IMG/VR virus record: IMGVR_UViG_3300037882_003354
Coordinates: 1 to 64,000 of that record
DNA: 64,000 nucleotides
Strand: one strand, 5' to 3'
In this document: positions 13,064 to 53,412 of the stretch, in pieces
How the letters are laid out: the number at the start of each line of letters is the position of its first letter
Position numbering within the stretch: position 1 is the first letter of the stretch
The notes under the pieces: model-generated
The model's database searches: none
What the model was told of the DNA's origin: nothing
The model's input: only the letters and a program-made list of their open reading frames with translations
Translations under genes and position numbers: made by a program

Positions 13064-13155
13064 GATACAAATTTAAGGTAGAAGTAAGAGAAACTCAATC
13101 AAACATGGCTTTCAGAGAAGGCCACAGAGAGTGGAACGAGGATTTGTTTGCGTGA
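13060..13155 (+). pseudogene. Displaced duplicate of the queD 3' end
   Basis: Encodes MRYKFKVEVRETQSNMAFREGHREWNEDLFA; 13078-13150 matches 11828-11900 with synonymous changes. Confidence 0.85.
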
Positions 13156-14330
13156 AAAAACATACGGCAGTTGTGGGAGCAGGTATCACTGGCATGACCG
13201 CAGCCTATTATTTGGCTCGAGCAGGACATCAGGTGACCGTATACGAGCAAGAACGATATCCTGCCATGCGAACCAGTTTTGCCAACGGTGGACAGATCAG
13301 CGTCAGTAACAGTGAAGTATGGAACACTTGGAGCAATGTTAAAAAGGGCTTCAAATGGATGCTGAAAAAAGACGCGCCATTGTTGGTCCGTCCTCGTCTG
13401 GATTGGGCACAGTGGGAATGGATGTTTAAATTTTTGTATTACACCGTGACCGGTGCTTATGAAAAGAACACCAGGGAAACCATACGACTGGGTCTGGATT
13501 CCAGGGACTTGTACCAGCAGATGATTAAAGACGAACTGCTGGAGTTTGATCAAAGTCGCAGTGGAATTTTACATTTTTATCGAGATCCACTGTATTTCCA
13601 GCATGCAATCAATGTAAAAGATCTCTATAACAGCAGCGGCGTAGAGTGGGACATATTGGAACCACTGCAGACCAAAAGCCTTGATCCTGCTCTGTGTGAT
13701 CTAACAGGCGTAGTAGGAGGTGCCTGGACTCCTGAAGATTGGACCGGTGACATACACAAATTTTGTGTGCAACTGGCACAAGTCTTAGAAGAAAAATATG
13801 GTGTTAGTTTTGTATATGGCTCAAATACTGATCTAGAGCAACTTGCTGTTGACCATGATCATGTGGTGGTTTCTGCAGGTGTGGGCAGCGTAAAATTAGC
13901 AGCCAGCATTGGGGATCATTTGCCCATCTATCCCATCAAGGGATATAGTATCACAATCCAGGTACGTGATCAAGATCTCATACATCTACCACGAGTGAGT
14001 TTGCTGGACGATCAGGCCAAGATTGTGACCTCCACACTGGGCAATAAATTTCGTGTGGCGGGCACTGCTGAGTTGGCTGGCGAGAATTATGACATCAGGG
14101 CAGACCGGATTGCTCCTCTGCTAAAATGGGTGCATGACAATTTCCCTGGTATAAACACTAGTGAATATTCCAGCTGGGCATGTCTTCGGCCCATGACTCC
14201 CAACATGCTGCCCATAGTAGAGCAGAGCCAGACCAATCACAAAGTATACTATCATACTGGTCACGGCCACTTGGGCTGGACCCTTAGTCCGGCCACGGCC
14301 AAACAACTGGTAGATAAGATGTCCAACTGA
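13152..14330 (+). CDS. dadA: FAD-dependent D-amino acid dehydrogenase
   Basis: VVGAGITG, TSFANGGQIS, YPIKGYSIT, RVAGTAE, WACLRPMTP, GHGHLGWT. Confidence 0.9.
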   Translation: MKKHTAVVGAGITGMTAAYYLARAGHQVTVYEQERYPAMRTSFANGGQISVSNSEVWNTWSNVKKGFKWMLKKDAPLLVRPRLDWAQWEWMFKFLYYTVTGAYEKNTRETIRLGLDSRDLYQQMIKDELLEFDQSRSGILHFYRDPLYFQHAINVKDLYNSSGVEWDILEPLQTKSLDPALCDLTGVVGGAWTPEDWTGDIHKFCVQLAQVLEEKYGVSFVYGSNTDLEQLAVDHDHVVVSAGVGSVKLAASIGDHLPIYPIKGYSITIQVRDQDLIHLPRVSLLDDQAKIVTSTLGNKFRVAGTAELAGENYDIRADRIAPLLKWVHDNFPGINTSEYSSWACLRPMTPNMLPIVEQSQTNHKVYYHTGHGHLGWTLSPATAKQLVDKMSN

Positions 14331-14516
14331 CATGAAGAAAATTTTAATGGCGGGTGGTGCAGGATTTTTTTGGGATAATCCAGGAAAATGCATCATGCTA
14401 GGGTTGATGCAGAAAGTCATTGACTTTGCGTCGTCTTCAAGTATAATAGTATACAAGCACTTGCCCATACAGGGTTACAATATACTACTAACTACTTTCC
14501 CACTAAAAAGAGAATT

Positions 14517-14987
14517 ATGGAAATCCAACCCAAACAACTAAATTTTGCCAATTGTGAAGCCGGTACAGAATATAGGTATAATGCCATCACAGCCCTGTTG
14601 CATGAGCATCAGTGCACTGTTGATTTTGTTAAACTTGACGGCGAGACTCGTACCATGCCCTGTACCCTGCGTTCCGATCTCATGCCAGTGGCCACACAGA
14701 TGATCAAAGAAGACATGGTGAACAAACCTGTAAACTATGAAACCATCACAGTCTGGTGCACTGACAAGCAGGCCTGGCGCGCCATGAAGACCATGAACGT
14801 GACCTCCATCAGGGTCGCACCCACTTCCTGGACGGTGACAGTAGAGCAAGATCCTGCAACTGGTGACATCCTGCTGCCCTTGCCACCTGATGTGCTGACC
14901 ATGCGTGGTTGGAACGAGGGAGACACCCTGGAATGGTCGGACAACGGCGACGGATCTTGGAGCCTGTCCAAAGTCCATGAACTGTAA
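14517..14987 (+). CDS. SH3/WYL-like domain fused to an AbrB-like domain
   Basis: VDFVKLDGETRTMPCTL...WRAM; then ILLPLPPD...GWNEGDTLEW. Confidence 0.55.
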   Translation: MEIQPKQLNFANCEAGTEYRYNAITALLHEHQCTVDFVKLDGETRTMPCTLRSDLMPVATQMIKEDMVNKPVNYETITVWCTDKQAWRAMKTMNVTSIRVAPTSWTVTVEQDPATGDILLPLPPDVLTMRGWNEGDTLEWSDNGDGSWSLSKVHEL

Positions 14988-15239
14988 TACTTGTCACAAA
15001 GAATACACCGTCCGGTGTGCACTAAAACAGGGCCGATGCCCACATCATGCACCATTAATTGAGGTAAAAAATATGATACAAATTTTTAAACCACTGCGAG
15101 AACGCATCAGCTATATCAAGAGTTTCACCGGCATTGTATGTGGAATCATACTATGTGTGAGCGGCTGGGGACTATTGGCTTACGTGCTGGGCGTCATGCT
15201 GATTCTAGCAGAGATCATCATTCTTTTGGAGAAATTGGA

Positions 15240-15422
15240 TTGAACTCAGTACAACAACGCATGGCAGAATTGATGGAGCCCATCAACCGTCAGATTATGA
15301 TGTGTGATTCCACACAAGAAATGCTCATGATTGCCAGTGCCATGATGGTCAGTGCCAAGGAAATTTTCGATAATCATATTGGTGTGCAGGGTCGTAAACA
15401 AATGTTCAAAGATCTGTCATGA
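15240..15422 (+). CDS. Hypothetical protein
   Basis: LNSVQQRMAELMEPI...; coupled to uvsE; start uncertain. Confidence 0.45.
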   Translation: MNSVQQRMAELMEPINRQIMMCDSTQEMLMIASAMMVSAKEIFDNHIGVQGRKQMFKDLS

Positions 15423-16453
15423 AAAACATCAAGCGTCTGGCTTTTGCCTGCAAGTGGATTGACTCCATGGACCAGGTGGACGCAATCAAGCCCACTGACG
15501 ACTGCAGAAAATACAACACCAGTACCACCACGGTGGCCTGGTTGAATCGGCAGCCACGGGATGTGGCAGTACAAAAACTCTGGGACCTGATGGTGAGCAA
15601 CATTGAGTCTGTTCGACTGTTGGTGGAGCGAGTGGGATTCCTGCAGCCGCACCTGCGCATGGTCCGACTGGGCTCAGATCTACTGCCAGTGTACACACAG
15701 GCAGATTGGTCCTGGTTTTGGAAGCGGCCGGATGTAATCGCATATTGTGAACAGCAGTTTGCCAGGATTGGCGCAATCGCTCGTGATCGTGATGTCAGGC
15801 TGTCCATGCATCCTGGACAATTTGTGGTGCTGGCCAGTGAAACTCCTGCCATTGTGGAACGCAGTATAGAAGAATTTGAGTATCATGCGGACATGGCACG
15901 TTGGATGGGTTTCGGTCGTGAGTTTCAGGACTTCAAGATCAATGTGCACATCTCAGGACGGCTGGGTCCTGCAGGTATTCGCACCGTATATCAACGCCTC
16001 ACTCCCGAGGCACGCAACTGTTTGGCTATTGAAAATGAGGAAATGACCCATGGATTGGATGATTGTCTCGCTATTTCTGATCTGGTGGCTATCACACTGG
16101 ACATACATCATAATTGGATTAAAACAGGAGAGTACATCTCCCCAACCGACCCTAGGATCGATCGTGTTATTCAGTCTTGGCGCGGTCGCCGGCCTACTAT
16201 GCATTATAGTATCAGCCGTGAAAATGTTCTCCTGGATCACAGCACTACTGTGATGCCTGATCTGGCCAGCCTGCTGGCATCAGGACACAACCGTCAGAAA
16301 CTCAGGGCGCACAGTGATACCTATTGGAATACCACGGCAAACGACTGGGCGCTGAGTTTCCTGGATCGATTCGATCTCATGTGTGAAAGTAAATCCAAGA
16401 ATCTTGCCAGCTTTGCACTGGCCAGTCGAGCCCAAGAATTAAACCTTCTTTGA
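15419..16453 (+). CDS. uvsE: UV DNA damage endonuclease (UvsE/UVDE)
   Basis: RLGSDLLP, RLSMHPGQFVVLAS, IENEE, LDIHH, LRAHSD, MCESKSKNLA. Confidence 0.9.
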   Translation: MKNIKRLAFACKWIDSMDQVDAIKPTDDCRKYNTSTTTVAWLNRQPRDVAVQKLWDLMVSNIESVRLLVERVGFLQPHLRMVRLGSDLLPVYTQADWSWFWKRPDVIAYCEQQFARIGAIARDRDVRLSMHPGQFVVLASETPAIVERSIEEFEYHADMARWMGFGREFQDFKINVHISGRLGPAGIRTVYQRLTPEARNCLAIENEEMTHGLDDCLAISDLVAITLDIHHNWIKTGEYISPTDPRIDRVIQSWRGRRPTMHYSISRENVLLDHSTTVMPDLASLLASGHNRQKLRAHSDTYWNTTANDWALSFLDRFDLMCESKSKNLASFALASRAQELNLL

Positions 16454-16747
16454 AGGTGCCTTGACTTTCTTTGCAGCCGGGGCCTTGACTCGGGCTGTAG
16501 TTGCTTTTGTGGTCTTCACTGGCGTTTTTGCCACAACCACTGGTGCCGACTTGGCTGTTCTGGGCTTGCGTGGTTTCTTGGCAGGCGCCACTTCCACCAC
16601 AGCTTCAGCAACTGGTGTTTCGATCTTGTAAGGGGCCTGGTCCCAGATCTCATCTAGGGTGGGCGCTGTTTGCTTGTACCTGTGGCCCACCCAGGCGGCG
16701 GCGCCTGCTGCCAGGGCAAGAATGGCGAGAATGATAATGATTTCCAT
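16439..16747 (-). CDS. Membrane-anchored Lys/Ala-rich protein
   Basis: Hydrophobic N-terminus; histone-like basic tail; AGGA RBS. Confidence 0.65.
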   Translation of the reverse strand: MEIIIILAILALAAGAAAWVGHRYKQTAPTLDEIWDQAPYKIETPVAEAVVEVAPAKKPRKPRTAKSAPVVVAKTPVKTTKATTARVKAPAAKKVKAPSKKV

Positions 16748-16802
16748 TTGGGGTTTCCTTTAAAGAAGTTTATGTGTTTATTTAACTCCGAATAAATACC
16801 AT

Positions 16803-17372
16803 GTGGAAAAAACATTACATGAGTTGAGCAAGATCATAACACTGGCTGAATCAACTAAAGAACAGTTGGTTCTGGCACCGTTACCCTATGCTCGCGATGA
16901 TCTTGACCCTGTATTGAGTGCGGAGTCCTTGGTCAACCACCATGACAAACTGGCACAAGCCTATGTCACCAGATATAACAATGGTGAGGGGGATGCAGAG
17001 TTCAATCAGGCCGGCGCATTTCTGCACAATATCTTTTTCCCACAACTACAGGCACCCATGGGCGGCAACAAACCACATGGCGCCAGTGCTGAGTTTATCG
17101 AGCGACATCACAGCAGTTTTGACCAATTGAAAAGCCATGTGGAGACCCAGGCCATGGGCATACAAGGCAGCGGGTGGGTTTACCTGGCTCGCAATGGTGA
17201 AGTAAAAACCATTAAAAATCATCAAATACGGCAGGACATCGTGCTGCTAATAGACTGGTGGGAGCATGCTTTTATCTTGGACTACGGCACTGACAAGGCA
17301 AAATACTTAAAAAACATATGGAGGATCATCAACTGGTCGGTTATCAACGACAGAATACACTTGAACAAGTGA
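16803..17372 (+). CDS. sod: Fe/Mn superoxide dismutase
   Basis: LPYARDDLDP, HHDK, FLHNIFF, QGSGW, DWWEHA. Confidence 0.92.
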   Translation: MEKTLHELSKIITLAESTKEQLVLAPLPYARDDLDPVLSAESLVNHHDKLAQAYVTRYNNGEGDAEFNQAGAFLHNIFFPQLQAPMGGNKPHGASAEFIERHHSSFDQLKSHVETQAMGIQGSGWVYLARNGEVKTIKNHQIRQDIVLLIDWWEHAFILDYGTDKAKYLKNIWRIINWSVINDRIHLNK

Positions 17373-17407
17373 TTCTGTAATACTGTTAAAATTATTGGAG
17401 TAATAAG

Positions 17408-17632
17408 ATGTCTAACCACGAAATAGGCGATGTTTCCCAAGTTGAAGACGTTGAAGAAGATGATGCATATGCCAAAGACGACTTTGGATTTATCATCGGA
17501 GCCGACGGAGATTTAAAGAGTATCATGTATCCCGAGCACTTGATGGGCGAACCTCCTGAAGAAATCAAGATGATTCTGGAGATTTTTGGCATTGACGACC
17601 TAGATCAGGTGGAAAACAGAGTGTTGCATTGA
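17408..17632 (+). CDS. Acidic hypothetical protein
   Basis: 74 aa; GGAG RBS. Confidence 0.65.
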   Translation: MSNHEIGDVSQVEDVEEDDAYAKDDFGFIIGADGDLKSIMYPEHLMGEPPEEIKMILEIFGIDDLDQVENRVLH

Positions 17633-17669
17633 TGCGTTTTGGGTAAATATCGGATAACCATTTACCCCA

Positions 17670-18824
17670 ATGACCTCACCCACTTGGATTACCCCGGCAG
17701 GATTTTTATTCACTGCCACTGAATTATTGATCACCGCCACCACGGTGATGGCCGTGGGCACACCCACATACACTCTGATAAGTGGTGCCCTGCCCCTGGG
17801 TCTGACATTATCCACTGCCGGCGTGATCTCGGGCATACCGTCGGGTGTGTTGGATGTCGGTCGCAGTGAATTCGTCATCCGAGCAGCCAACTCATCGGGC
17901 AAGACTGATCGCACATTTTATGTTGATGTTGCAGGGCCTGATGCACCCATCTGGCTAATACCCGCAGATTATTATCTGCCCGTGGGCATACGTGGCGAAT
18001 CATATGCTCTGAACAAGCAATGGGTAGATTATCAGCTGACCGCCCAGCCGGTGCAGGCCCCAATCAACACTCCGTTGAAGTATTACATAGCCAGGGGCGA
18101 TGGACTATTACCACCAGGTCTGACACTGAGTCAGACCGGCAGAATAACCGGCTACGTCAACGACCAGTTGTCCTACGAAGCTGACATTTCTGTACTGGGT
18201 GGATACGATGACGAGGCTTATGATAAATTTCCCTACGATCATGGTGGCAGTTACCTGGGATCCATCACCGATGCCAGCATGGCAGGCTTGCCCAAGATCT
18301 ATCAATTCATAGTCACTGCAAGTGACGGTGTGGCGCAAGAAAAAAGATTATTCAAGATTGTGGTCACTGACACTATCATTCTGACTTTCAATTTAAAGTC
18401 CATGCCTGAAGAGCTGACAACGTCAACCAGCGTGTTGTACGTACCATTGTCCACCAGCACAATATATGCACCATTACCGCAGTGGATCAATGGCTCAGAC
18501 CTAGGCACTGTGCGCGCTAACAACAACGTCAGCATCGATGTGTCGGCTTATGATCCATATAACTTGGTATTACGAGACAATCAAAATTTTACATCTGTTC
18601 CTGATGTGATCGTGGACATCGTAACACCTCCACCGCCACCGCCACCACCGCCTCCCCCACCGCCTCCCCCACCGCCACCGCCTCCTCCACCGCCTGTGAC
18701 CACGCTGGGTGTCTATGATGTCGGCATTTACGAACCGGGCATATACAATCAGACTGTGGTCTCAAGCGATGTGGTGTTCGAGGCTGGCATATACGAACCA
18801 GGCATCTACTACGATGCTGCATAA
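17670..18824 (+). CDS. Ig-like (He_PIG-type) virion structural protein, N-terminal part, with poly-Pro tail
   Basis: SGALPLGLTLS..GVISG and LPPGLTLSQTGRITG repeats; poly-Pro tract; YEPGIY x2. Confidence 0.75.
   Translation: MTSPTWITPAGFLFTATELLITATTVMAVGTPTYTLISGALPLGLTLSTAGVISGIPSGVLDVGRSEFVIRAANSSGKTDRTFYVDVAGPDAPIWLIPADYYLPVGIRGESYALNKQWVDYQLTAQPVQAPINTPLKYYIARGDGLLPPGLTLSQTGRITGYVNDQLSYEADISVLGGYDDEAYDKFPYDHGGSYLGSITDASMAGLPKIYQFIVTASDGVAQEKRLFKIVVTDTIILTFNLKSMPEELTTSTSVLYVPLSTSTIYAPLPQWINGSDLGTVRANNNVSIDVSAYDPYNLVLRDNQNFTSVPDVIVDIVTPPPPPPPPPPPPPPPPPPPPPPPVTTLGVYDVGIYEPGIYNQTVVSSDVVFEAGIYEPGIYYDAA
18626..18694 (+). repeat. Poly-proline coding tract
   Basis: Over 20 consecutive CCN codons. 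Confidence 0.9.
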
Positions 18825-18827
18825 ATA
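18821..18827 (+). promoter_or_regulatory. T4-like late promoter motif ATAAATA
   Basis: The motif recurs just upstream of many genes: + strand at 11921, 16792, 29901, 43124; - strand at ~40233, 44059, 45006, 61872. Confidence 0.6.
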
Positions 18828-18846
18828 CATAGAATAAGGAAATAAC

Positions 18847-19230
18847 ATGGGATATCTTTCACGAACTGAAAAAGGCAGCGCACTCAACATAAGTGAGCAC
18901 GATACCAATCTGGAATTGCTGGCCAAGGGTCGGGCACTTGATCCTGTGATCATTACTACTAGCACCACGTTAACAGCCACCCTGCATGAAAGTCGAGAAC
19001 TGTTTTGCAACAGTGACGACCCCATCACACTGACCATTGCGCTGGAAGCCAGCGGCGGCCCCACTGCGCTGGGTGCAAGATTTTTTGGTACCAACATCGG
19101 GGTGGGCGAGGTGACATTGCTGGCTGCTGGCACACTAAATGGCGATGCGCTGCTACCAGCCACCATCAGCCAATGGTCACCATTCGAAGCCATTAGAATT
19201 GACCCAGACATTTATGTGCGGAGAGCATGA
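18847..19230 (+). CDS. Tail-fibre adaptor-like protein
   Basis: N-terminal RTEKGSALN.SEHDTNL fibre-anchor-like motif; ITLTI...GEVTL beta domain. Confidence 0.6.
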   Translation: MGYLSRTEKGSALNISEHDTNLELLAKGRALDPVIITTSTTLTATLHESRELFCNSDDPITLTIALEASGGPTALGARFFGTNIGVGEVTLLAAGTLNGDALLPATISQWSPFEAIRIDPDIYVRRA

Positions 19231-19233
19231 TCC

Positions 19234-22200
19234 ATGCGCTCCCTATTTTTTAGAAGATCAGTTGCCCGAGCAAAGCAAGCCCCCACACTGAGGGAAGCGG
19301 CCAGGTTTTTACGCAATGCCACCCTGGCACCCAGCTATGCTGAAATACGCGCCCTGGTCAACAATCCCAGTGGTCTTGAGGCCACACTGACTTCCGGAAC
19401 CAACACTGTGGTGTTGACTGCGGGCACCACCAACGACTTGTATATAGGACAATTGTTGAAGAAAACCAGTGGCACTGGCGAATTTAACACCGACTGTTTC
19501 GTTGTTTTGATCAGTGATGCAAACACCTCCACATTCACAGTGAGTAATCCGCATGTGGCGTCAGGTGACATAGTGTTTAGTGGGGCCAACGATTTTACCA
19601 CTGATCATTTTTCCCGGTGGATAGACGCTCAGATGGCACTGTCATTCCCCAGAATCACCGCCACACAGCCGGCCAGGAGTGGCTGGGACGATGACTTCGT
19701 AGCATGTAGAGTCAATCCACTAGCTTTAGGTAGCACAGATGTTCTGTTGGCATCGGGCAATACCAGTCTGATGCGGGTGGGTGATTATTTATACTATACA
19801 CTTGGACAGGACAATTCCCATCTGGGCAGGTTTGGTGCTGGCGCTCGAGTTGCGTCGATAACTGACAACACCCGATTCACCACCACCGTGCCGCATGCGG
19901 CGTCAGGACAACTTGAGTTTTGGCACGGTAGTGGCATACAACAAACCATACGCATGCGTGAAACTTGCGGTGTCTTGGCACTAAACCGTGGAAACCTGGG
20001 AAGAACACTGAATTGGACCCAGTATCAAGAAGGCAGGAGACTAGCCGAAGCCTATAGATTTTACTTGCACCCTGATAAACTACGCATGCGTGTGATACGT
20101 GCTCTGTCGGAATTGTATTCTGTAGGTCCCACTATTCTTGACGGTGCAGAGGCCGCCAGGGGAACTGATTTTACTGACATGCTGTCAGCATCTGCATTTG
20201 GCAATTACGAAGATTTGATTTACAATGTGACCAAAAGTCTCATCATGGGACGATGGCTCAACCATGAAGGCAACAGGAAGGCCAGTGCGGCCAGCGAACC
20301 TGACGAAAATTATGCGCGAGAAATCATGCAACTGTACACCATTGGTCTATGGGAATTACATCTCAACGGTTCTAGAAAACTGGCCAGTGAGCTATCTCCC
20401 AATGACAGTCGTTATATTGCCCAGCCTGACCCGGGATGGGATGCACAAGTGCCCACCTACGGCTATGATGACATACGAGCCATGGCCAGAATACTCACCG
20501 GATATGTGAGTGCAAGTAGAAATCAAGTTTATTATCTGGGCAACCTTGACGACTCAGTCACGGTGACCATGGCCAGCACCACCACCTCACATGGATTGTT
20601 GCCTGGGGATGGAGTATACATTAGTTTCCCACCTTATGACGATGTCCGTTGGAAGGCCACGTTTACCAACAGCAGCACCACATGCACAGTGATCGATACT
20701 ATAGGTTACGGATCCATCCACGGTTTAAGTGCGAATATGGACATCCTGGATATGGACGCCAATCCTGACCGGGAATATACCATTACCTCAGTCAATACAT
20801 TGACAAATACGTTCACTGTTAACACTGCCAGCAATGTGACTGGTGCCCGCGTCATACAGCAAAAAACACCCCCTAATACGGGGTCGTATCTTCCAACATC
20901 AGCTATATTTTCAGTAGTCAGTACATCCAGCGATCGGGTGTTCACCTTTGATTATTCCACACTGCCAATTAAAGCGTCCAACATAAAAACTAGAATCAAA
21001 GGCCGTGGCGGCTACGCTTATATATCGTCAGAGATCATTGGTGGTATTGATCGGGGCATGATCATAGACCAGGACAGACACGAATATGCGTTGCCCAAGG
21101 TGGCCCTCAAGTGGATCACCAATGATCCGGACCAGATCGAGAATGATGCAGCCCTGGCTGGCTCATTATACATTCCCTCCAGAACAATATCATTGAATGC
21201 CACACTGGCAGCCAACACCAACACCGTTTTACTCAGAGATGTGTCATTCCGCGCCCCTGGTACGACCAACTTCGATGTAAATCGTGTCAACACCACAGAC
21301 GTGTTGTATGTGGGACAGCCACTGTACAAGATTAGTAATACTGGCGTATTTGGCACTGGCACTTTTGTAACCAGTATCAACAGCTCTTACGAATTCACAG
21401 TGAGCGTCAATCATAGAACTTCCGGTAACGTGACATTTACAGGCACCAGTACTGGATTCCAGGCCACGCTGGAGCAGGGTAGCAATACTGTTGTATTGAC
21501 ACCTGGTAAAGGCATACCACAAGGCCTGTATGTGGGGCAGGCCCTGTCCAAGATCAGCGGCACCGGCGTGTTTGGAACAGGCACAGTGGTCAGCTCCATA
21601 ATGATGGGCAGCACCACCACATTCCAGGTGAGTGTGCCGCATGAGACCTCGGGTGTTATATCTTTTCAAGGTCTAAACCCCCGCACCATGGTGGGACTGA
21701 CCGATCCAACACTTCTACAAAATTTAGCCGAACAAGAAGTCAGATGGGCCATGCGAGCACTAACCCGTCATCCCAGCACAGCACCCTATTTTGCCACCCG
21801 AATGATTCGCATGATGGTCACCAGTAATCCGTCTCCAGGCTACATTGCTCGAGTGGCATCTGTGTTTAGGAATGATGGACAGGGCGTGGTGGGCAATCTG
21901 GCAGCCGTGTTCAAGGCCATGTTGCTGGATCAAGAAGCTCGCGCACCAGCATCGAAAAATTTAATTGCCAGGGGTACCGACCCACATGACCTGGGCGCCA
22001 CTCTGGTGGGCGCCACACGCCGCCGCCCAGACCGCCTGGGCGGCAGGCTGGATGGTTATAACAGGCAGCATGGCACTGGCACTAGTCAATACACCCAGGC
22101 CTTTACCTACGCCACCGCGCTAAATCACGGTGTTAATTTTGGTCTGTTCACCACTGGTTCGGTATTTGGTCGGTATCCTGCAATATATTCACCAGCGGGG

Positions 22201-22566
22201 CCAGTTCAAGATGCAGGTAAAATTGCACCAGAATTATTCCTATATGATGAAAATGGCACCAGTCGTATCTACAATAGTTCTGAGGATTTCAATGTTATTA
22301 TAGTAGACATCATGGACCGAGAACAGGAGCATCTGCAATTGGCAACGTCCAATCCTAGTGCTGAGGCCAACATCGATGCTCTGATAGAAAAATATAACAT
22401 TCTGTTCACAGGTGGCACTGCTTCGCCTGCATATATAGCAGCATTGTCCAGTTTTATTAAAAATACCACCAATTTCAGTCGCAGCACGGTGTCCAGCCAA
22501 AAAAAGGCACTTCAAATGATCATGCACAGTCTGTACATCAGCCCTTATTCAGTAATCAGGACCTAA
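19234..22566 (+). CDS. DUF1800 family protein with beta-repeat insertions, no signal peptide
   Basis: EAARFL, DKLRMRV..ALSE, AFGNY, PDENYAREIMQLYTIGLWEL, HPSTAPY, VTSNPSPGYIARVA, GNLAAVFKAMLLD. Confidence 0.88.
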   Translation: MRSLFFRRSVARAKQAPTLREAARFLRNATLAPSYAEIRALVNNPSGLEATLTSGTNTVVLTAGTTNDLYIGQLLKKTSGTGEFNTDCFVVLISDANTSTFTVSNPHVASGDIVFSGANDFTTDHFSRWIDAQMALSFPRITATQPARSGWDDDFVACRVNPLALGSTDVLLASGNTSLMRVGDYLYYTLGQDNSHLGRFGAGARVASITDNTRFTTTVPHAASGQLEFWHGSGIQQTIRMRETCGVLALNRGNLGRTLNWTQYQEGRRLAEAYRFYLHPDKLRMRVIRALSELYSVGPTILDGAEAARGTDFTDMLSASAFGNYEDLIYNVTKSLIMGRWLNHEGNRKASAASEPDENYAREIMQLYTIGLWELHLNGSRKLASELSPNDSRYIAQPDPGWDAQVPTYGYDDIRAMARILTGYVSASRNQVYYLGNLDDSVTVTMASTTTSHGLLPGDGVYISFPPYDDVRWKATFTNSSTTCTVIDTIGYGSIHGLSANMDILDMDANPDREYTITSVNTLTNTFTVNTASNVTGARVIQQKTPPNTGSYLPTSAIFSVVSTSSDRVFTFDYSTLPIKASNIKTRIKGRGGYAYISSEIIGGIDRGMIIDQDRHEYALPKVALKWITNDPDQIENDAALAGSLYIPSRTISLNATLAANTNTVLLRDVSFRAPGTTNFDVNRVNTTDVLYVGQPLYKISNTGVFGTGTFVTSINSSYEFTVSVNHRTSGNVTFTGTSTGFQATLEQGSNTVVLTPGKGIPQGLYVGQALSKISGTGVFGTGTVVSSIMMGSTTTFQVSVPHETSGVISFQGLNPRTMVGLTDPTLLQNLAEQEVRWAMRALTRHPSTAPYFATRMIRMMVTSNPSPGYIARVASVFRNDGQGVVGNLAAVFKAMLLDQEARAPASKNLIARGTDPHDLGATLVGATRRRPDRLGGRLDGYNRQHGTGTSQYTQAFTYATALNHGVNFGLFTTGSVFGRYPAIYSPAGPVQDAGKIAPELFLYDENGTSRIYNSSEDFNVIIVDIMDREQEHLQLATSNPSAEANIDALIEKYNILFTGGTASPAYIAALSSFIKNTTNFSRSTVSSQKKALQMIMHSLYISPYSVIRT

Positions 22567-22570
22567 TCAA

Positions 22571-24373
22571 ATGGCATTATTACCAGCAGAGTTTACGCAA
22601 GCAATAAAAGCAGTTGACAAGCAAAAGTCAAACAACAAACGTGCCCTGGTGATTGTGTACCTGGGTGGTGGGTCGGATAACTTTAATTTTGTCAGCCCCA
22701 CCACTGGAACCAATCGCGTGAATTACGAAGCCGCTCGTGCAGAAACAAATAGAATTCCTGTTGATGCCACAGGCAATACCCAATTGATGCCCGGCTGGCA
22801 AATGCACCCGCAATGTTTCAAGCCGGTGTTAACTGGGGGATCGTACGCTTACCATTCACCCACCACAACAGTTGTCACATCCAACGCAGTGGCTCAGTTG
22901 ACCTCCAATCTTCGATTGGACACTGGGGATCAGGTGTACATTGATTTTAAAACTGTGAATACTGGAACGATTGCCACTAGCGGGGTGTTCACGGCCACGG
23001 TATTAACTTCCAGTACATTCATAATCGATAGATCGGTGGATGTTGATCAAACAGGTACGGCTGACATCACCATAAGAAAGAACACCTTCATGCGTTTGAT
23101 TGACCAGGGCAAGGCAGCAGTAATCATGAATGTGGGACCCTTGATGGAACCCACCAGTCGGGCAAATGTAGGCGGTGCTTATTATGGCCAACCGGCCTCA
23201 GTAAAATTGCCAGTGCAAATCGCCAGTCATTCAGATCAAAATGCTTTATGGCAGACCGGTGTTGCGCAAAACCCACAGTACACCACCGGTTGGGCAGGTC
23301 GGGCCATGGATTTGTTAAACCCAGTGTACAACTCCACGCTGACCAACGGAGAACCCACGGTGCTATATCCGTCATCCATCTCTTTCAGTGGAGTGGGTGT
23401 GGCATTTCGAGCCAATGATCAACACGCCGCTGGCATGTCCCCCACCGGATTGACCGGTCGCACGGGCAAAATTTTATCTAATGTAGCAAACACTGGTACC
23501 ATCAACTCATTTGGTTCCGGCACCCAGGGACAACTGTTGACTAATTTTAACAATGTGTTGTACACTGACACCACCTCATCCAATGCATTGATTAAAGAAT
23601 ATTTGGCGGCTCAACAGCGAAGTGATGTGGCGACCCAGGTGATATCAGCGGTATTGGCTACAACGAATACATTTAATACTGTACCGAGCGACAGATTTAG
23701 CGCAGGTGAGTCGATATATTCTTCATTAAAAACCACTACTCGATTGATCAAGGGCATGTTTGACACAACACCGTCGAGAGATTTACAACAAAACCGTCAG
23801 ATTTTCTTCATGACGCACGGCGGATTTGACCAACACGATGATTTGATTTTTGACCAAGACAAGCGACTGGCGCCACTCATGTCGGCATTAAGACAATTCT
23901 ATGATGCAACTGTGGATTTGGGCGTGCAAGATAATGTCACCCTGCTGGTGTATAGTGAATTCGGCAGAACATTATTGCAGAACGATGATGGAACTGACCA
24001 TGGTTGGGGAGGGCATGTGCTGGTCATGGGTGGCGCGGTGCAAGGTGTCAATGGAGTGGGCGGTCTCCCAGTATTTGGCACTCCCCCCACCATTGGCACT
24101 CGATCTGATCGATGGGGACCAGACTTCACAAATGATTTCCGAGGGCTACTATTACCATCCATGCCCACTGAAACATTGTATTCAACACTAATACAATGGA
24201 TGGGTATACCGGATGGTTGGTATGATTTGAATGGTGATCCCACAGTCAAGGGCGCACAAAATGCTGTCAACCCTGTGGAAGTAGTGTTACCCAACATGCC
24301 TAACTTTGACACGGCAGTGGACGGGTCGGGCAATCCCAGACTGAGAAAAATCACAGGACTCTTGAGTCCCTAA
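22571..24373 (+). CDS. DUF1501 family protein lacking a Tat signal
   Basis: ALVIVYLGGGSD, NVGPL, SHSDQ..WQ, GWAGR, GGFDQH, SEFGRTL, GTDHGWG. Confidence 0.9.
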   Translation: MALLPAEFTQAIKAVDKQKSNNKRALVIVYLGGGSDNFNFVSPTTGTNRVNYEAARAETNRIPVDATGNTQLMPGWQMHPQCFKPVLTGGSYAYHSPTTTVVTSNAVAQLTSNLRLDTGDQVYIDFKTVNTGTIATSGVFTATVLTSSTFIIDRSVDVDQTGTADITIRKNTFMRLIDQGKAAVIMNVGPLMEPTSRANVGGAYYGQPASVKLPVQIASHSDQNALWQTGVAQNPQYTTGWAGRAMDLLNPVYNSTLTNGEPTVLYPSSISFSGVGVAFRANDQHAAGMSPTGLTGRTGKILSNVANTGTINSFGSGTQGQLLTNFNNVLYTDTTSSNALIKEYLAAQQRSDVATQVISAVLATTNTFNTVPSDRFSAGESIYSSLKTTTRLIKGMFDTTPSRDLQQNRQIFFMTHGGFDQHDDLIFDQDKRLAPLMSALRQFYDATVDLGVQDNVTLLVYSEFGRTLLQNDDGTDHGWGGHVLVMGGAVQGVNGVGGLPVFGTPPTIGTRSDRWGPDFTNDFRGLLLPSMPTETLYSTLIQWMGIPDGWYDLNGDPTVKGAQNAVNPVEVVLPNMPNFDTAVDGSGNPRLRKITGLLSP

Positions 24374-24376
24374 ATC

Positions 24377-25729
24377 ATGGCCAATGTGACCACCAATCAG
24401 GGCGTGACTGTGTATACAGTCACAAGTTCCACAGACTCGGCCACCCGTATACCCGACAACCTGGTGTTGGATCCCCTGAAGGGCGTCATACACGGCAACA
24501 TACCCTATCAGCCGGCCTACGTCAAGAATTATGAACTGACGGTCAATGCCACCAAGTACATCACCACCTCGTCAGGCGCACCTCTTTACGTTGTCACCAC
24601 CACCAACACATTTACCCTGGCCATCAAGGGCGAAGTTGAAAGCACCATCGAATGGGTCACTGGCACTGATTTGGGATCCATTGAAACTGGCATCACCAGT
24701 GAACTGGCCGTGGCAGCCCGCCAGATAAATTCAGATTACACCATCAAATATCAGCTGGCCAGTGGCACACTTCCACCGGGGCTGGCCTTGGAAAGAGATG
24801 GCAGTCTGTCCGGCCGTGTGAATACTGGATCCACCACTGGCACCTACACATTCTCCGTCACAGCCAGCGATGTTTACCAGTTGAGTGCCGTACAACGAAC
24901 ATTCACAGTCAATGTCATACAACTAGATAACCGTGTGTACACTGAAGTTTACATGCGCCCGTTTCTGTCCCGACAAAAACGCGATGTCTACAGAGAATTT
25001 ATATCCAACGAGTTTACATTTCCACCCAACATGATGTATCGATATTTTGATGCCAACTTTGGGGTGAGACATGATCTCAGGATCACACTGGAATTTGGCA
25101 TAGAGAAGATAAACTTGCGTGATTATGTGCCAGCACTCAGGGAGAACTTCTATCGTAGGAGGTTTTATTTTGGCGACGTCAAAACGGCGGTGGCCAAGGA
25201 CACACACGGCAGGGTGTTATACGAACTGGTGTATGTGGATGTGGCCGACAGCCTGGTGAACAATTCTGGAGACAGTGTGTCATCCATGATCACATACAAT
25301 CATGGTGGCATGTATTACCCTGGCAGCGTGGCCAACATGAGACAACGATTACAAGGACTGGTACTTCCAGATGATCAATACATTGGTATCAACTACTTTA
25401 ATTTGCCACGATTCATGCAAACACCGCAAGTGGGCAGTTATCGCCCAGTGGAGTACATCAGTGTGATACCGCTTTGTTATGCGCTGCCCGGACAAGCAAG
25501 TAAAATCGTCAGCAGAATTCGACTGAGCAAGTTTGATTTTAAGTTGATAGATTTTGAAGTTGACCGATTGATTGTACAGAGCAGTGCTGATAACAACTCA
25601 GCTAAATATTTGATGTTCGACAGAGAGGATTTAGCCAATTCCATCAGCGACGATTATATTGTATACGGCGCTGACGCCGTGAGTATAAGCACCGTGCAGG
25701 ATGCGGTGCCATTAACCAGAGAAGAATAA
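24377..25729 (+). CDS. Ig-like virion structural protein, C-terminal part
   Basis: LDP..GVIHG.IPYQPA, SGTLPPGLAL..DGSLSG, YPGSVANMR, LCYALPG, FDFKLIDFEVDR. Confidence 0.75.
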   Translation: MANVTTNQGVTVYTVTSSTDSATRIPDNLVLDPLKGVIHGNIPYQPAYVKNYELTVNATKYITTSSGAPLYVVTTTNTFTLAIKGEVESTIEWVTGTDLGSIETGITSELAVAARQINSDYTIKYQLASGTLPPGLALERDGSLSGRVNTGSTTGTYTFSVTASDVYQLSAVQRTFTVNVIQLDNRVYTEVYMRPFLSRQKRDVYREFISNEFTFPPNMMYRYFDANFGVRHDLRITLEFGIEKINLRDYVPALRENFYRRRFYFGDVKTAVAKDTHGRVLYELVYVDVADSLVNNSGDSVSSMITYNHGGMYYPGSVANMRQRLQGLVLPDDQYIGINYFNLPRFMQTPQVGSYRPVEYISVIPLCYALPGQASKIVSRIRLSKFDFKLIDFEVDRLIVQSSADNNSAKYLMFDREDLANSISDDYIVYGADAVSISTVQDAVPLTREE

Positions 25730-27306
25730 TGACACAAATCACCAACTTGCCAGCATTGACCACCATAACCAATGCCATTGTGCTCCCCATTCAGGATCTC
25801 TCCTCACTACCCAACATCACCAAGAAGATGACCATACCACAGCTCAAACAGGCGCTGAGTGGTGCACAGGGATACAGCGGTTCATCAGGATATACAGGTT
25901 CTGCCAGCAATGTAATAGGACCACTAGGGTACACTGGCAGTCGAGGTTACACTGGCAGCACGGGTTATACTGGCAGCACAGGATATGCTGGCAGTCTGGG
26001 ATACACCGGCAGCATAGGTTACACGGGCAGCACGGGTTATACTGGCAGCCGGGGATACGCAGGTAGTCGTGGCAATCTGGGTTATACCGGATCCATAGGC
26101 TATACCGGAAGTTCAGGATATGTGGGATCGCAAGGAGAACCAGGATTAATAGGCGACGTGGGATACGACGGATCCCGGGGTGATCAGGGATACCAGGGCA
26201 GTCGTGGTGACCTGGGCTACACTGGCAGCATGGGATATACCGGATCAATTGGTTATACCGGCAGTCGGGGTGACTCTGGATATGACGGATCCAGGGGTGA
26301 CCTGGGCTACACTGGGTCAATTGGATATACTGGCAGTCAGGGCGATACAGGTTACGCAGGCAGTGCGGGGATTGACGGTGATGATGGTCTACCTGGTGCG
26401 CGCGGTCCGCAGGGGTACACCGGCAGTTATGGTTACACAGGTTCCAGTATAACTGGATATGCTGGCAGCCGTGGATATGCTGGCAGCCGTGGATATGCTG
26501 GCAGCCGTGGATATGCTGGATCAATAGGATATACTGGCAGTAGCGGCTATACTGGCAGTCGGGGATACACTGGATCAACGGGAGCAGGATACACCGGCAG
26601 TCGAGGCCTGGATGGAGCAGCAGTGGCCAGGGGTGACACTGGGTATACCGGCAGCCTGGGCAAATTTATCAGTAGCGACATTGATTGCGGGACACCCTAC
26701 GATGTCAGCAACACCAGAGTCCAACTGCGTCGTGGCACCGCCCAGCAGTGGACCACACTGCCGTCGCCAAATTCAGTTTTACGATCAGGTGAAATCGGAA
26801 TCGAAACCGACACTGGGGCAATCAAGGCTGGCAATGGCACAGCCTCCTGGAATACCTTGCCCTACACCAACAATGCACAGAACAGTCTGGCCACGCCCAG
26901 CAGCACCCGACCACCCACTGTGGACGCTGTGAATGCGGCGTTGGCGGTGCTGGCAACACCGGGTCAACTGTACATGGATTCAAACAACGACATCACTGAA
27001 ATTCGTACTCTTAGTGCATCGGATTTTGACGGGTATATTCGTCGTATCAATAGTGAGTATCCCATCACAGTCACCGTGCCCACAGTGGCTGACATGGGTC
27101 TTGAATCAGATCCAAATATCCTGCGCACCATTGTATTCCTGCACATGGCTCTTGGTGATTTGGAATTTTACGCCAGTGAGGGTGTTACAATCAATGGAGT
27201 GGCTGGTCCCAGTGTGGTCAACCCAGTGGGCGGTGCCGCTGTGGGCTATAAGTTTTATACACTCACACAGATGTCTGTGAATGGTGATGAATGGGCGCTA
27301 TCATGA
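25729..27306 (+). CDS. Collagen-like (GYTGS) tail fibre with an Mtd/hyaluronidase N-terminal-like domain
   Basis: About 260 aa of Gly-X-Y; QLRRGTA..W...GEIGIETDT..K.GNG..WNTLPY. Confidence 0.85.
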   Translation: MTQITNLPALTTITNAIVLPIQDLSSLPNITKKMTIPQLKQALSGAQGYSGSSGYTGSASNVIGPLGYTGSRGYTGSTGYTGSTGYAGSLGYTGSIGYTGSTGYTGSRGYAGSRGNLGYTGSIGYTGSSGYVGSQGEPGLIGDVGYDGSRGDQGYQGSRGDLGYTGSMGYTGSIGYTGSRGDSGYDGSRGDLGYTGSIGYTGSQGDTGYAGSAGIDGDDGLPGARGPQGYTGSYGYTGSSITGYAGSRGYAGSRGYAGSRGYAGSIGYTGSSGYTGSRGYTGSTGAGYTGSRGLDGAAVARGDTGYTGSLGKFISSDIDCGTPYDVSNTRVQLRRGTAQQWTTLPSPNSVLRSGEIGIETDTGAIKAGNGTASWNTLPYTNNAQNSLATPSSTRPPTVDAVNAALAVLATPGQLYMDSNNDITEIRTLSASDFDGYIRRINSEYPITVTVPTVADMGLESDPNILRTIVFLHMALGDLEFYASEGVTINGVAGPSVVNPVGGAAVGYKFYTLTQMSVNGDEWALS

Positions 27307-45267: not shown

Positions 45268-45580
45268 AAAAGAATGGGCCCCGAGGAACCCATTCACTAT
45301 TTCCTGTTTCTAGGGATAGTTCCCCAATGATGGTTTAAGCGGCCATCAAATATGCATCATCATTAGCTGCATTTAAAGGTTTTGCTTGATTGACAGTCAT
45401 CGCCTACTGTGTTGCCTGCTCCACTATCTCGCGCAATCGAAAACCTGGTCATCCCCATCAAAAGCACTCCCACGGTTTATCTGTCCGTTGCCAGCATACT
45501 ATGTACCTGGATGAAAATGCTTTTGGTGGAGATGGGCGGAATCGAACCGCCGTCTTGCCCGCCTTTGTTTTGCCGGAATT
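45268..45580 (-). ncRNA. ssrA: Circularly permuted (two-piece) tmRNA gene
   Basis: Acceptor piece GGCGGTTCGATTCCGCCCATCTCCACCA ends at 45524 and precedes the coding piece starting GGGGATG at 45456; G3-U70 pair; tag ORF 45370-45335 AANDDAYLMAA*; terminator 45268-45295. Confidence 0.92.
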
Positions 45581-45602
45581 ACAACAATTAAGAATATTTA
45601 GT

Positions 45603-49382: not shown

Positions 49383-49390
49383 GGTGTCTC

Positions 49391-53404: not shown

Positions 53405-53412
53405 AGTCCTCA

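What the first reader, a model, noticed from the sequence alone, without database searches (positions are those of the whole stretch)
17670..25729. Ig-repeat structural gene apparently split by a ~5.6-kb cargo cassette
Seen: ORF 17670 leaves its Ig-type sequence after DLGTVRANNN...AYDPY and ends in poly-Pro plus YEPGIY repeats. ORF 24377 starts mid Ig-repeat (IPDNLVLDP..GVIHG.IPYQPA). Inference, from recalled single-gene homologues in large phages: these are two halves of one baseplate-region gene, with adaptor-DUF1800-DUF1501 inserted between them and a novel C-terminal tail gained by the first half.
Basis: inference. Interest (0 to 1): 0.6.

Follow-up and report, generated by a model that had tools for sequence, protein, structure and literature searches.

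The report
Phage Ig-repeat gene split by cargo
In a freshwater jumbo phage, a virion Ig-repeat protein gene that is one gene in nearly all relatives has been cut in the middle of an Ig domain by a 5.8-kb insert carrying an adaptor and two enzyme-like genes, and both halves are still kept by selection.

Summary
The observation and the core inference both hold. ORF 17670-18824 (384 aa) and ORF 24377-25729 (450 aa) are the two halves of one gene. In 67 of 80 related IMG/VR loci, and in over 100 database proteins of 660-790 aa, the same sequence is one open frame. None of those loci carries the intervening genes.

The break lies in the B-C loop of the third Ig domain. At most about 4 residues are lost.

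The insert (about 18561-24400) gives the first half a new tail: a 22-aa linker, exactly 23 prolines and two GIYEPGIY motifs. It then encodes:
- a 127-aa protein with a tailspike-adaptor-like fold;
- a DUF1800 protein with four inserted beta modules;
- a DUF1501 protein without the Tat signal that its paralogue in the same genome keeps;
- a new ATG for the second half.

Five independent assemblies and 13 studies of lake metagenomes hold this arrangement. Omega is 0.09-0.32 for every gene at dS up to 1.5, so this is neither decay nor an artefact. No homing endonuclease, intron or intein was found.

Reassembly of the halves by strand complementation has only weak support from the complex prediction (0.43 against 0.00). 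Display of the cargo on the virion is inferred, not shown.

I rate it a new variant of the phage "genes in pieces" kind.

The parts
17670..18560 (+). N-half, ancestral part (P0001 residues 1-297): Ig1, Ig2 and strands A-B of Ig3. The Ig3 fragment is about 18456-18560.
   Evidence: He_PIG 6.3e-12. Aligns to residues 1-316 of the single-gene homologue P0007. The Ig3 fragment is 31/35 identical between the window and L107, against 9/22 for the linker next to it.
18561..18824 (+). Gained C-terminal tail of the N-half: linker 18561-18626, 23 prolines 18627-18695, two GIYEPGIY motifs 18696-18821, then the stop.
   Evidence: No counterpart in intact homologues or elsewhere in the genome. No Pfam family. 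Conserved in L106, L107 and L098, with exactly 23 Pro in the window, L106 and L107 despite synonymous turnover.
18847..19230 (+). P0002, 127 aa: a stand-alone copy of a fibre N-terminal adaptor domain.
   Evidence: 48-51% identical to the first 135 residues of the collagen-like fibre P0265 in L106. The AF2 model (pLDDT 62.6) matches tailspike and fibre attachment domains: Pa223 capsid spike Z 9.0 (rmsd 2.5, 88 aligned) and CBA120 TSP4 N-terminal region Z 8.6 (rmsd 3.3, 92 aligned). After seven rows at Z 7.8-9.0, six of them from phage structures, the next row is Z 5.1. Omega 0.14-0.15.
19234..22566 (+). P0003, 1110 aa: DUF1800 protein with four inserted copies of a beta module of about 70 aa.
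   Evidence: PF08811 2.8e-45 in two stretches. The module repeats occur only inside this gene. Omega 0.14-0.32.
22571..24373 (+). P0004, 600 aa: DUF1501 protein with no Tat signal and one inserted module.
   Evidence: PF07394 2.5e-22. The family motifs GGGSDxxN, SHSDQ and DHGWGGH are kept, but the N-terminus has no twin-arginine signal. The paralogue P0266 (48012-49382) and the bacterial homologues do have one. It sits on a very long branch in the family tree.
24377..24400 (+). New start codon and the first 8 residues (MANVTTNQ) of the C-half.
   Evidence: Identical in L098, L099 and L101. Absent from intact homologues at this position.
24401..25729 (+). C-half, ancestral part (P0005 residues 9-450): Ig3 strands C-G (24401-24637), Ig4 (24638-24928) and the C-terminal domain (24929-25726).
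   Evidence: Aligns to P0007 residues 321-702. He_PIG 3.6e-12 and phrog_13911. AF2 pLDDT 84.3. The C-domain resembles the 2H phosphoesterase fold: Usb1 Z 11.1, rmsd 3.7, 172 aligned. Omega 0.086-0.15.

Best explanation
SHOWN
- The window is the first 64 kb of a complete 322.5-kb freshwater jumbo phage.
- Its Ig-repeat virion structural gene is one gene in almost all relatives: Ig1-Ig2-Ig3-Ig4 plus a 2H-fold-like C-terminal domain.
- Here it was cut in the B-C loop of Ig3 by a segment of about 5.8 kb.
- The 5' end of the segment is fused in frame to the upstream half. It gives that half a flexible linker, a 23-proline stretch and two GIYEPGIY motifs.
- The segment then carries three tightly packed genes: a fibre-type adaptor domain, a DUF1800 protein and a DUF1501 protein.
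- Its 3' end supplies a new ATG for the downstream half.
- The arrangement is old and is kept by purifying selection on both halves and on the cargo.
- The insert carries no mobility gene, intron or intein.

INFERRED
1. The two halves still work together. Strands A-B of Ig3, left on the first half, complete the truncated Ig3 of the second half by non-covalent strand complementation. This ties the first half to the virion through the second half's C-terminal domain.
2. The proline stretch, taken to act as a rigid rod, and the GIYEPGIY motifs form a docking arm for the adaptor domain encoded directly downstream. That adaptor brings in exchangeable cargo.
3. In the window the cargo is the enzyme pair DUF1800 + DUF1501. 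The DUF1501 protein has no Tat signal, so it would stay in the cytoplasm where virions assemble. A 97%-identical sister (L106) instead has a collagen-like fibre with the same adaptor domain at its N-terminus.

The confidence given covers the shown part together with the claim that both halves remain functional. On my own estimate, the three inferred steps are each below even odds.
For: One gene elsewhere:
- N and C parts share one frame in 77 of 80 IMG/VR loci. None has P0002, P0003, P0004 or the tail within 10 kb.
- P0007, P0008 and P0134 align across the break.
- Syntenic 'empty sites' exist: L003 has UvdE-SOD-..-702 aa-collagen fibre, and L109 has UvdE-74 aa-671 aa.
- DUF1501 is absent from five related jumbo records and from 50,697 GenBank phage records.

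Real and old:
- The same order is found in L098 (Logan), L099 (ENA), L101 and L107 (JGI) and L106.
- The stretch is held in 20 runs from 13 studies.
- Contigs of two other studies bridge the right junction, and no insert-less joint was seen.
- Omega is 0.125-0.135 for the N-half, 0.086-0.15 for the C-half and 0.13-0.32 for the cargo, at dS up to 1.1-1.5.

Halves cooperate:
- The Ig3 fragment is 31/35 conserved, against 9/22 for the adjacent linker.
- Natural short forms of the family begin exactly at strand A, so they have a whole Ig3.
- Complex prediction gave weak support: score 0.43, best control 0.00, partner pLDDT at least 59, runs agreeing in at least 83% of contacts. Passes at 0.60 or below were reached by only 5 of 78 solved complexes and by all 4 mismatched pairs that passed.

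Docking arm and adaptor:
- The tail is followed by a P0002-type domain in both cargo contexts.
- The proline count is fixed at 23.
- The P0002 fold matches tailspike attachment domains at Z 8.6-9.0, with 5.1 for the next row after the seven at Z 7.8-9.0.

Cargo retained in the cell:
- P0004 lacks the Tat signal that the in-genome paralogue and bacterial homologues carry.
Against: - No protein-level data exist. No RNA run holds the stretch.
- The complex verdict is only 'weak support', which the tool says is more often wrong than right unless the guess was likely beforehand.
- Natural 451-aa forms without Ig1-Ig2 (P0251, P0261) show that the C-part can work without the N-part.
- AF2 folds the truncated Ig3 of P0005 confidently on its own, pLDDT 86-90 for residues 11-40.
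- Nothing links DUF1800 or DUF1501 physically to P0002 or to the tail.
- The P0002 model is of modest confidence (pLDDT 62.6, four sequences), and Pfam gives it no family.
- The left junction was not bridged by the listed Logan contigs, because the proline-coding repeat attracts unrelated contigs. It is covered only by the window, L106 and L107.
- What lies after the fibre gene in L106 is unknown.
Confidence: 0.7

Rival explanations
1. Fission by insertion is real, but the halves no longer interact. P0005 acts alone, like the natural 451-aa short forms. P0001 has become a separate protein. The cargo genes are ordinary late-expressed auxiliary genes and are not virion parts.
For: Short forms that begin at Ig3 and lack Ig1-Ig2 exist in syntenic relatives. 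L008 has the two parts as separate cistrons. AF2 folds P0005 confidently without the missing strands. The complex support is only weak. The phage has a second, clearly non-structural DUF1800/DUF1501/DUF1996 cluster.
Against: The 35-aa Ig3 fragment left on P0001 is about as conserved as the Ig2 stretch next to it (31/35 against 64/77 identical), while the adjacent linker decays. The short forms and P0010 of L008 all keep strands A-B, which P0005 lacks. The cargo DUF1501 has lost the Tat signal kept by its paralogue. The complex score exceeds all controls by 0.43.
Confidence: 0.25
2. The intervening segment is removed, or the halves are rejoined, to restore a single polypeptide. Candidate routes are a group I/II intron, a split intein ('fractured gene'), or DNA excision.
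For: The break is clean, with at most about 4 residues missing.
Against: No Rfam family was found in 17000-26500 even at E up to 1. There is no intein or Hint family in either half or in the tail. The residue after the break is Asn, not Cys/Ser, and the 8-residue N-terminus of P0005 has no Asn followed by Cys/Ser/Thr. There are no flanking direct or inverted repeats and no recombinase. The three inner genes are under purifying selection. No insert-less joint was seen in four runs.
Confidence: 0.02
3. The split is an assembly chimera or a decaying pseudogene.
For: The record is a metagenome assembly. Only contigs, not raw reads, could be laid on it.
Against: Five other assemblies from different samples show the same junctions. 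Omega is 0.09-0.15 for both halves at dS above 1. Both ORFs are intact in all copies.
Confidence: 0.01
4. Two genes is the ancestral state, and the single genes elsewhere are fusions.
For: L008 has two cistrons, and the short forms lack the N-part.
Against: The cut lies inside a beta-sandwich domain, not between domains. Single genes are found at every depth of the family, from 27% to 62% identity. The split with cargo is confined to one shallow clade with P0005 identity of 78% or more. The cut in L008 is at a different position.
Confidence: 0.02

Closest known systems
Phage 'genes in pieces' made by homing-endonuclease insertion: Aeh1 nrdA split by mobE, T4 topoisomerase gene 39/60 split by mobA, gene 43A/43B of Aeromonas phage 25 (reviewed in PMC2988022)
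   Same: A gene that is contiguous in related phages is cut inside a functionally important region into two cistrons. Both are kept and must reassemble.
   Different: The intervening DNA here is 5.8 kb with three cargo genes and no endonuclease. The host gene is a virion Ig-repeat protein, not an enzyme. The upstream half gained an 87-aa tail that is under selection. Reassembly has not been shown.
Fractured genes with split inteins and an intervening endonuclease (PMC2677866, listed)
   Same: The two halves of a gene are separated by inserted ORFs.
   Different: There are no intein halves, and the junction residues cannot support protein splicing.
Ig-repeat virion structural protein family: phrog_13911, the Asteriusvirus 797-aa protein WOL22857.1, the Ecwhy_1 'structural protein', and look-alikes in Klebsiella phage K64-1 and Agrobacterium phage Atu_ph07
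   Same: He_PIG Ig domains followed by the same C-terminal domain of about 265 aa.
   Different: All of those are single polypeptides. Here the protein is encoded in two pieces that flank cargo.
Branched tailspike systems with T4 gp10-like attachment domains, such as CBA120 TSP4 (7rej)
   Same: The P0002 model matches the N-terminal attachment region of TSP4 and other tailspikes (Z 8.6-9.0). The same domain heads a collagen-like fibre in L106.
   Different: P0002 is a free-standing 127-aa protein. It has no Pfam T4_gp9_10_N hit, and only a feature-based lead points to that family. Its partners are unknown.
Bacterial DUF1800-DUF1501 operon pairs (PMC5122149)
   Same: The two families are adjacent and in the same order. 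The DUF1501 motifs are conserved.
   Different: The DUF1501 protein has no Tat signal. Both proteins carry extra beta modules. Both sit inside a split phage structural gene.

Membership tests
He_PIG Ig-repeat virion structural protein (phrog_13911-type) | He_PIG Ig domains | tested here: met
   PF05345 at 6.3e-12 for P0001 and 3.6e-12 for P0005.
He_PIG Ig-repeat virion structural protein (phrog_13911-type) | Conserved C-terminal domain of about 265 aa | tested here: met
   phrog_13911 at 2.2e-07. 24% identity to Asteriusvirus P0006 over 387 columns, 2e-12. 50-62% identity to more than 100 metagenomic proteins.
He_PIG Ig-repeat virion structural protein (phrog_13911-type) | Encoded as one polypeptide | tested here: not met
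   Two ORFs lie 5.5 kb apart, whereas 77 of 80 relatives have one frame.
Genes in pieces by homing-endonuclease insertion | A gene contiguous in relatives is cut into two retained cistrons | tested here: met
Genes in pieces by homing-endonuclease insertion | The intervening ORF is a homing endonuclease (HNH, GIY-YIG, LAGLIDADG and the like) | tested here: not met
   Pfam and PHROG scans of all sense ORFs and six antisense ORFs found only DUF1800 and DUF1501.
Genes in pieces by homing-endonuclease insertion | The split products reassemble into a working protein | tested here: inconclusive
   Complex prediction gave weak support: 0.43 against a best control of 0.00. The Ig3 fragment is conserved. 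No experiment has been done.
Split intein / fractured gene | Intein N- and C-fragments at the break, with a nucleophile at +1 and a terminal Asn | tested here: not met
   No intein family was found. The junction residues are Asn after the break and Gln-Gly at the restart.
Group I/II intron | Intron RNA structure at the boundaries | tested here: not met
   No Rfam match at E up to 1 in 17000-26500.
DUF1800-DUF1501 pair | Adjacent PF08811 and PF07394 genes | tested here: met
   155.7 and 80 bits, both above the cut-offs.
DUF1800-DUF1501 pair | Tat signal on the DUF1501 protein | tested here: not met
   P0004 has no twin-arginine signal. The paralogue P0266 (RRQFL) and bacterial P0030 and P0062 have one.
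T4 gp10-like / tailspike attachment domain (P0002) | Sequence membership in PF07880 | tested here: not met
   No Pfam hit at E 0.01. Only a feature-based lead at 0.94.
T4 gp10-like / tailspike attachment domain (P0002) | Fold of the attachment beta-sandwich | tested here: inconclusive
   Seven rows at Z 7.8-9.0, six from phage structures (Pa223 spike, CBA120 TSP4, Solidus tailspike, KP1 baseplate), against 5.1 for the next row. The model pLDDT is only 62.6.
Moron (self-contained inserted transcription unit) | Own promoter and terminator flanking the insert | tested here: inconclusive
   The consensus scan shows no convincing sites at the borders. The genes are 3-22 nt apart and look co-transcribed. 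The phage's promoter type is unknown.

The most novel reading that the evidence does not exclude
The split is an adaptive design. A beta-sandwich domain divided between two polypeptides acts as a non-covalent clasp. The proline rod and the GIYEPGIY motifs form a docking arm. The gp10-like adaptor mounts exchangeable cargo on that arm: a collagen fibre in one strain, and a Tat-less DUF1800/DUF1501 enzyme pair in another. The jumbo phage would then carry these otherwise periplasmic bacterial enzymes on its tail. This would be the first functional context for the DUF1800/DUF1501 pair.
Probability: 0.22. Interest if true: 0.8.

Novelty: new variant of a known kind. Interest (0 to 1): 0.6.

Why it matters
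- Known phage genes in pieces are enzymes split by selfish endonucleases. Here a virion protein is split inside a folded Ig domain by a cargo operon with no mobility gene. The upstream half gained a conserved proline stretch and a repeat tail, and the whole arrangement has survived divergence past synonymous saturation.
- It gives a natural, testable case of how a structural gene can be opened to take in new genes. If strand complementation holds, it is also a natural split-domain assembly tag.
- It places the widespread but unexplained DUF1800/DUF1501 pair in a phage tail-fibre operon, in a form without the export signal. That offers a new handle on their function.

Tried and rejected
- PHROG scans gave nothing for P0002, P0003 or P0004.
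- Megablast of the region against GenBank phages found no match.
- Single-sequence scans of IMG/VR with P0002 and P0004 found no relatives.
- The word search with P0001 returned only intact or distant proteins, and not even P0001 itself. The orthologues came from the metagenome scan instead.
- The L100 record could not be searched for a downstream C-half because it is not held.
- No flanking repeats were found at the junctions. The NLVL tetrapeptide on both sides (P0001 298-301, P0005 28-31) is only 9/12 identical at the DNA level, and I treat it as chance.
- The promoter and terminator scan was uninformative.
- Read laying had only Logan contigs, no raw reads and no RNA. The proline-coding repeat attracted unrelated contigs, so the left junction was not bridged there.
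- The complex prediction for the two halves gave weak support only.
- The careful tree search for DUF1501 did not finish, so the quick tree was used.
- P0003 and P0004 have no solved relatives by sequence.
- The large representative-protein search was not used, as the operators advised. No other genetic code was used.
- Read laying was kept to 6,000 letters.

Full report
**What the window is.** The window is the first 64 kb of a 322,512-bp IMG/VR virus record with direct terminal repeats, rated 100% complete. The region of the finding is a run of + strand genes: DAO oxidoreductase, UvdE, Fe/Mn superoxide dismutase, a 74-aa ORF, then the five ORFs in question. After them come collagen-like tail-fibre genes at 25729-27306 and 29940-31829 and an 860-aa protein.

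**The observation.**
- P0001 (17670-18824, 384 aa) has two He_PIG Ig domains and begins a third. After ..VSAYDPY it leaves the family and ends in a 22-aa linker, 23 prolines and two GIYEPGIY motifs.
- P0002 (18847-19230, 127 aa) has no family.
- P0003 (19234-22566, 1110 aa) is a DUF1800 protein. Its domain is interrupted, and it carries four copies of a module of about 70 aa.
- P0004 (22571-24373, 600 aa) is a DUF1501 protein.
- P0005 (24377-25729, 450 aa) starts MANVTTNQ and continues in mid Ig domain. It then has a complete He_PIG domain and a C-terminal domain of about 265 aa that matches phrog_13911, 'virion structural protein'.

**One gene elsewhere.**
- tblastn found the C-part in a 797-aa Asteriusvirus protein, at its residues 402-780.
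- In IMG/VR, L003 encodes a single 702-aa protein (P0007) and L007 a single 661-aa protein (P0008). P0001 residues 1-296 and P0005 residues 9-450 align to these end to end. Only about four residues of the B-C loop are unaccounted for.
- A profile scan gave 80 related loci. My tblastn of the N and C parts found them in the same open frame in 77, and 67 of these span from Ig1 to the C-domain. Ten more are shorter single-ORF forms.
- The three exceptions are L030 (a different N-terminus), L054 (a short form) and L059, which is the same locus as L008 (two cistrons).
- None of the 80 loci has any match to P0002, P0003, P0004 or the P0001 tail within 10 kb.
- In the big protein collection, every relative of P0005 at or below 62% identity is 660-790 aa, apart from a few short forms.
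- L003 and L109 are syntenic 'empty sites': UvdE-(SOD)-small ORF-intact gene-fibre genes.
- DUF1501 is absent from five related jumbo-phage records, three of them at least 92% complete, and from 50,697 GenBank phage records.

**Where the cut is.** In the AF2 model of P0005 (pLDDT 84.3, pTM 0.70), the first strand (residues 9-15) corresponds to strand C of the complete Ig4. Strands A, A' and B of Ig3 are the roughly 30 residues left at P0001 268-296. The insert is about 18561-24400. The first three to eight residues of P0005 are new, or remodelled from the old loop.

**Real, old and selected.**
- The same order is found in L098 (Logan run: tail end, 127 aa, DUF1800, DUF1501, 450 aa).
- It is also found in L099 (ENA), in L101 (JGI; P0152 is 78% identical to P0005 with the same MANVTTNQGVTVYTV start) and in L107 (JGI: second half of P0001, P0002, DUF1800).
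- The stretch is held by 20 public runs from 13 studies, all lake or freshwater metagenomes.
- Logan contigs of four studies cover the cassette. Contigs in two of the four bridge the right junction. No contig joins the two halves without the insert.
- These are contigs, not reads. The proline-coding repeat attracted unrelated contigs, so the left junction rests on the window, L106 and L107.
- Nei-Gojobori estimates:

| Gene | Omega |
|---|---|
| P0001 | 0.125-0.135 |
| P0002 | 0.14-0.15 |
| P0003 | 0.14-0.32 |
| P0004 | 0.13-0.27 |
| P0005 | 0.086-0.15 |

- Synonymous divergence reaches 1.1-1.5. Decay and artefact are excluded.

**Not a known mobile element.** There is no Rfam match at E up to 1 and no flanking repeats. 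No endonuclease, recombinase or intein family appears in any sense or antisense ORF or in the tail. The junction residues cannot support protein splicing. GC content does not differ from the flanks. The genes are 3-22 nt apart and look co-transcribed.

**The tail and the adaptor.**
- Between the window and L107 the Ig3 fragment is 31/35 identical, the linker 9/22, the prolines 23/23 with heavy synonymous change, and the GIYEPGIY part 31/42.
- L106 encodes a P0001 orthologue that is 97% identical, tail included. The next gene there is a fibre of at least 625 aa. Its first 135 residues are 48-51% identical to P0002, and collagen repeats follow.
- So the tail is followed by a P0002-type domain in two different cargo contexts.
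- A loose end in run X2 at 18798 shows that the L106-type tail co-occurs with the cassette type.
- The AF2 model of P0002 is modest (pLDDT 62.6). Even so, seven PDB matches at Z 7.8-9.0 stand well above the next row at Z 5.1, and six of the seven come from phage structures, five of them spike, tailspike or baseplate parts. They include:
  - Pa223 capsid spike, Z 9.0;
  - Solidus tailspike, Z 8.7;
  - CBA120 TSP4 N-terminal region, Z 8.6 and 8.1;
  - a KP1 baseplate chain, Z 7.8.
- A feature search gave a lead to T4_gp9_10_N clusters.

**The cargo.**
- P0004 keeps the family motifs but has no twin-arginine signal.
- The second DUF1501 of this genome (48012-49382, minus strand, next to DUF1800 and DUF1996) has RRQFL plus a hydrophobic stretch, as bacterial homologues do.
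- In a quick tree the cargo copy sits on a very long branch. It is not sister to the in-genome paralogue, which groups with metagenomic sequences. Its origin is unresolved.
- The function of the pair is unknown in the literature I could search. They are described as operon partners, with DUF1501 exported by Tat (PMC5122149). They are also listed among genes next to orphan T6SS vgrG genes in one Xanthomonas strain (PMC6653060).

**How it most likely works.**
- Shown: fission by insertion, retention of all parts, and no splicing signals.
- Inferred:
  1. The halves reassemble by strand complementation of Ig3.
  2. The proline stretch, acting as a rigid rod, and the GIYEPGIY motifs form a docking arm for the adaptor.
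  3. The Tat-less enzymes stay in the cytoplasm and travel with the virion.
- For step 1, the complex test of P0005 1-95 with P0001 256-302 gave weak support. The score was 0.43 against a best control of 0.00, with partner pLDDT at least 59 and at least 83% of contacts shared between runs.
- The tool's own calibration tempers that result. Passes at or below 0.60 were reached by only 5 of 78 solved complexes and by all 4 mismatched pairs that passed.
- Against step 1:
  - natural 451-aa forms (P0251, P0261) live without Ig1-Ig2, although they begin exactly at strand A and so have a whole Ig3;
  - AF2 folds the truncated Ig3 confidently on its own.

**Comparison with what is known.**
- The closest kind is the phage 'genes in pieces': Aeh1 nrdA/mobE, T4 39/60/mobA and gene 43A/B (PMC2988022).
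- Shared features are a contiguous gene cut in a critical region and both cistrons retained.
- Differences are that there is no endonuclease, the insert is a three-gene cargo of 5.8 kb, the target is a structural protein, and the upstream half gained a selected tail.
- I therefore rate it a new variant of a known kind.

**The C-terminal domain of the host gene.** It resembles the 2H phosphoesterase fold: Usb1 Z 11.1 (rmsd 3.7, 172 aligned), and LigT and AKAP18 at Z 9.5-10. I see no conserved H-x-T/S motifs in alignments A3 and A4. It is probably a structural domain.

Noticed in passing
window 45271-45642 (-): The phage encodes a tmRNA of the betaproteobacterial type (RF01850, 139.5 bits; ARAGORN tag AANDDAYLMAA). 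This is a hint that the host is a freshwater betaproteobacterium.
   Followed up: partly
window 48012-53413 (-): There is a second cluster of DUF1501 (456 aa, with a Tat signal), DUF1800 (726 aa) and DUF1996 (609 aa). It is 34-47% identical to the cargo pair in conserved blocks and is not its sister in a quick tree.
   Followed up: partly
L008 10001-12815 (IMGVR_UViG_3300032240_001991, 326 kb): The same gene occurs as two adjacent cistrons with no insert. It is cut at the Ig2/Ig3 boundary (..TPTWL + 15 extra residues, stop, one base, ATG MSIIDLG..). The sister 328-kb contig L065 has one ORF. This looks like an independent fission rather than a simple frameshift.
   Followed up: partly
L100 10001-21122 (JGI 3300045678): P0136 (373 aa) has Ig1-Ig3 and stops at the start of Ig4 (..EVESSIEWVVKK). 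A Peptidase_S8/cadherin-like gene and a gene of over 3354 aa follow. No C-half lies within the locus. This may be a second split by cargo, or a truncation.
   Followed up: partly
L103 4062-5420, L104 10001-11356, L105 2046-3401: Natural 451-452-aa forms of the gene begin exactly at strand A of Ig3 and lack Ig1-Ig2. They sit directly after SOD and a 72-aa ORF, as P0001 does in the window.
   Followed up: yes
window 24929-25726 (P0005 residues 185-450): The C-terminal domain of the family resembles the 2H phosphoesterase fold (Usb1, LigT, AKAP18; Z 9.5-11.1) but has no conserved H-x-T/S motifs.
   Followed up: partly
L099 1-3550 against window 21550-25100: Divergence is mosaic. dS is 1.38-1.49 in DUF1800 and DUF1501 but 0.26 in the P0005 part of the same contig. 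P0005 residues 9-90 against L101 also have lower dS than the rest. Recombination breakpoints appear to lie near the right junction.
   Followed up: partly
window 18561-18572 and 24458-24469: The tetrapeptide NLVL follows the break in P0001 and recurs in P0005 residues 28-31. It is 9/12 identical at the DNA level. It is probably chance, but it could be a trace of the recombination that made the insert.
   Followed up: no
window 13131-17372: The host-like genes DAO-type FAD oxidoreductase, UvdE UV endonuclease and Fe/Mn superoxide dismutase lie just upstream. UvdE-SOD synteny is shared with L003, L103 and L104.
   Followed up: no
BFVD hit A0A2L0UZX3 (Agrobacterium phage Atu_ph07, 1251 aa): A protein annotated as extracellular serine proteinase resembles the P0005 model. 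In L100, L103 and L104 a Peptidase_S8 gene lies next to the Ig-repeat gene. The two may be fused in some jumbo phages.
   Followed up: no
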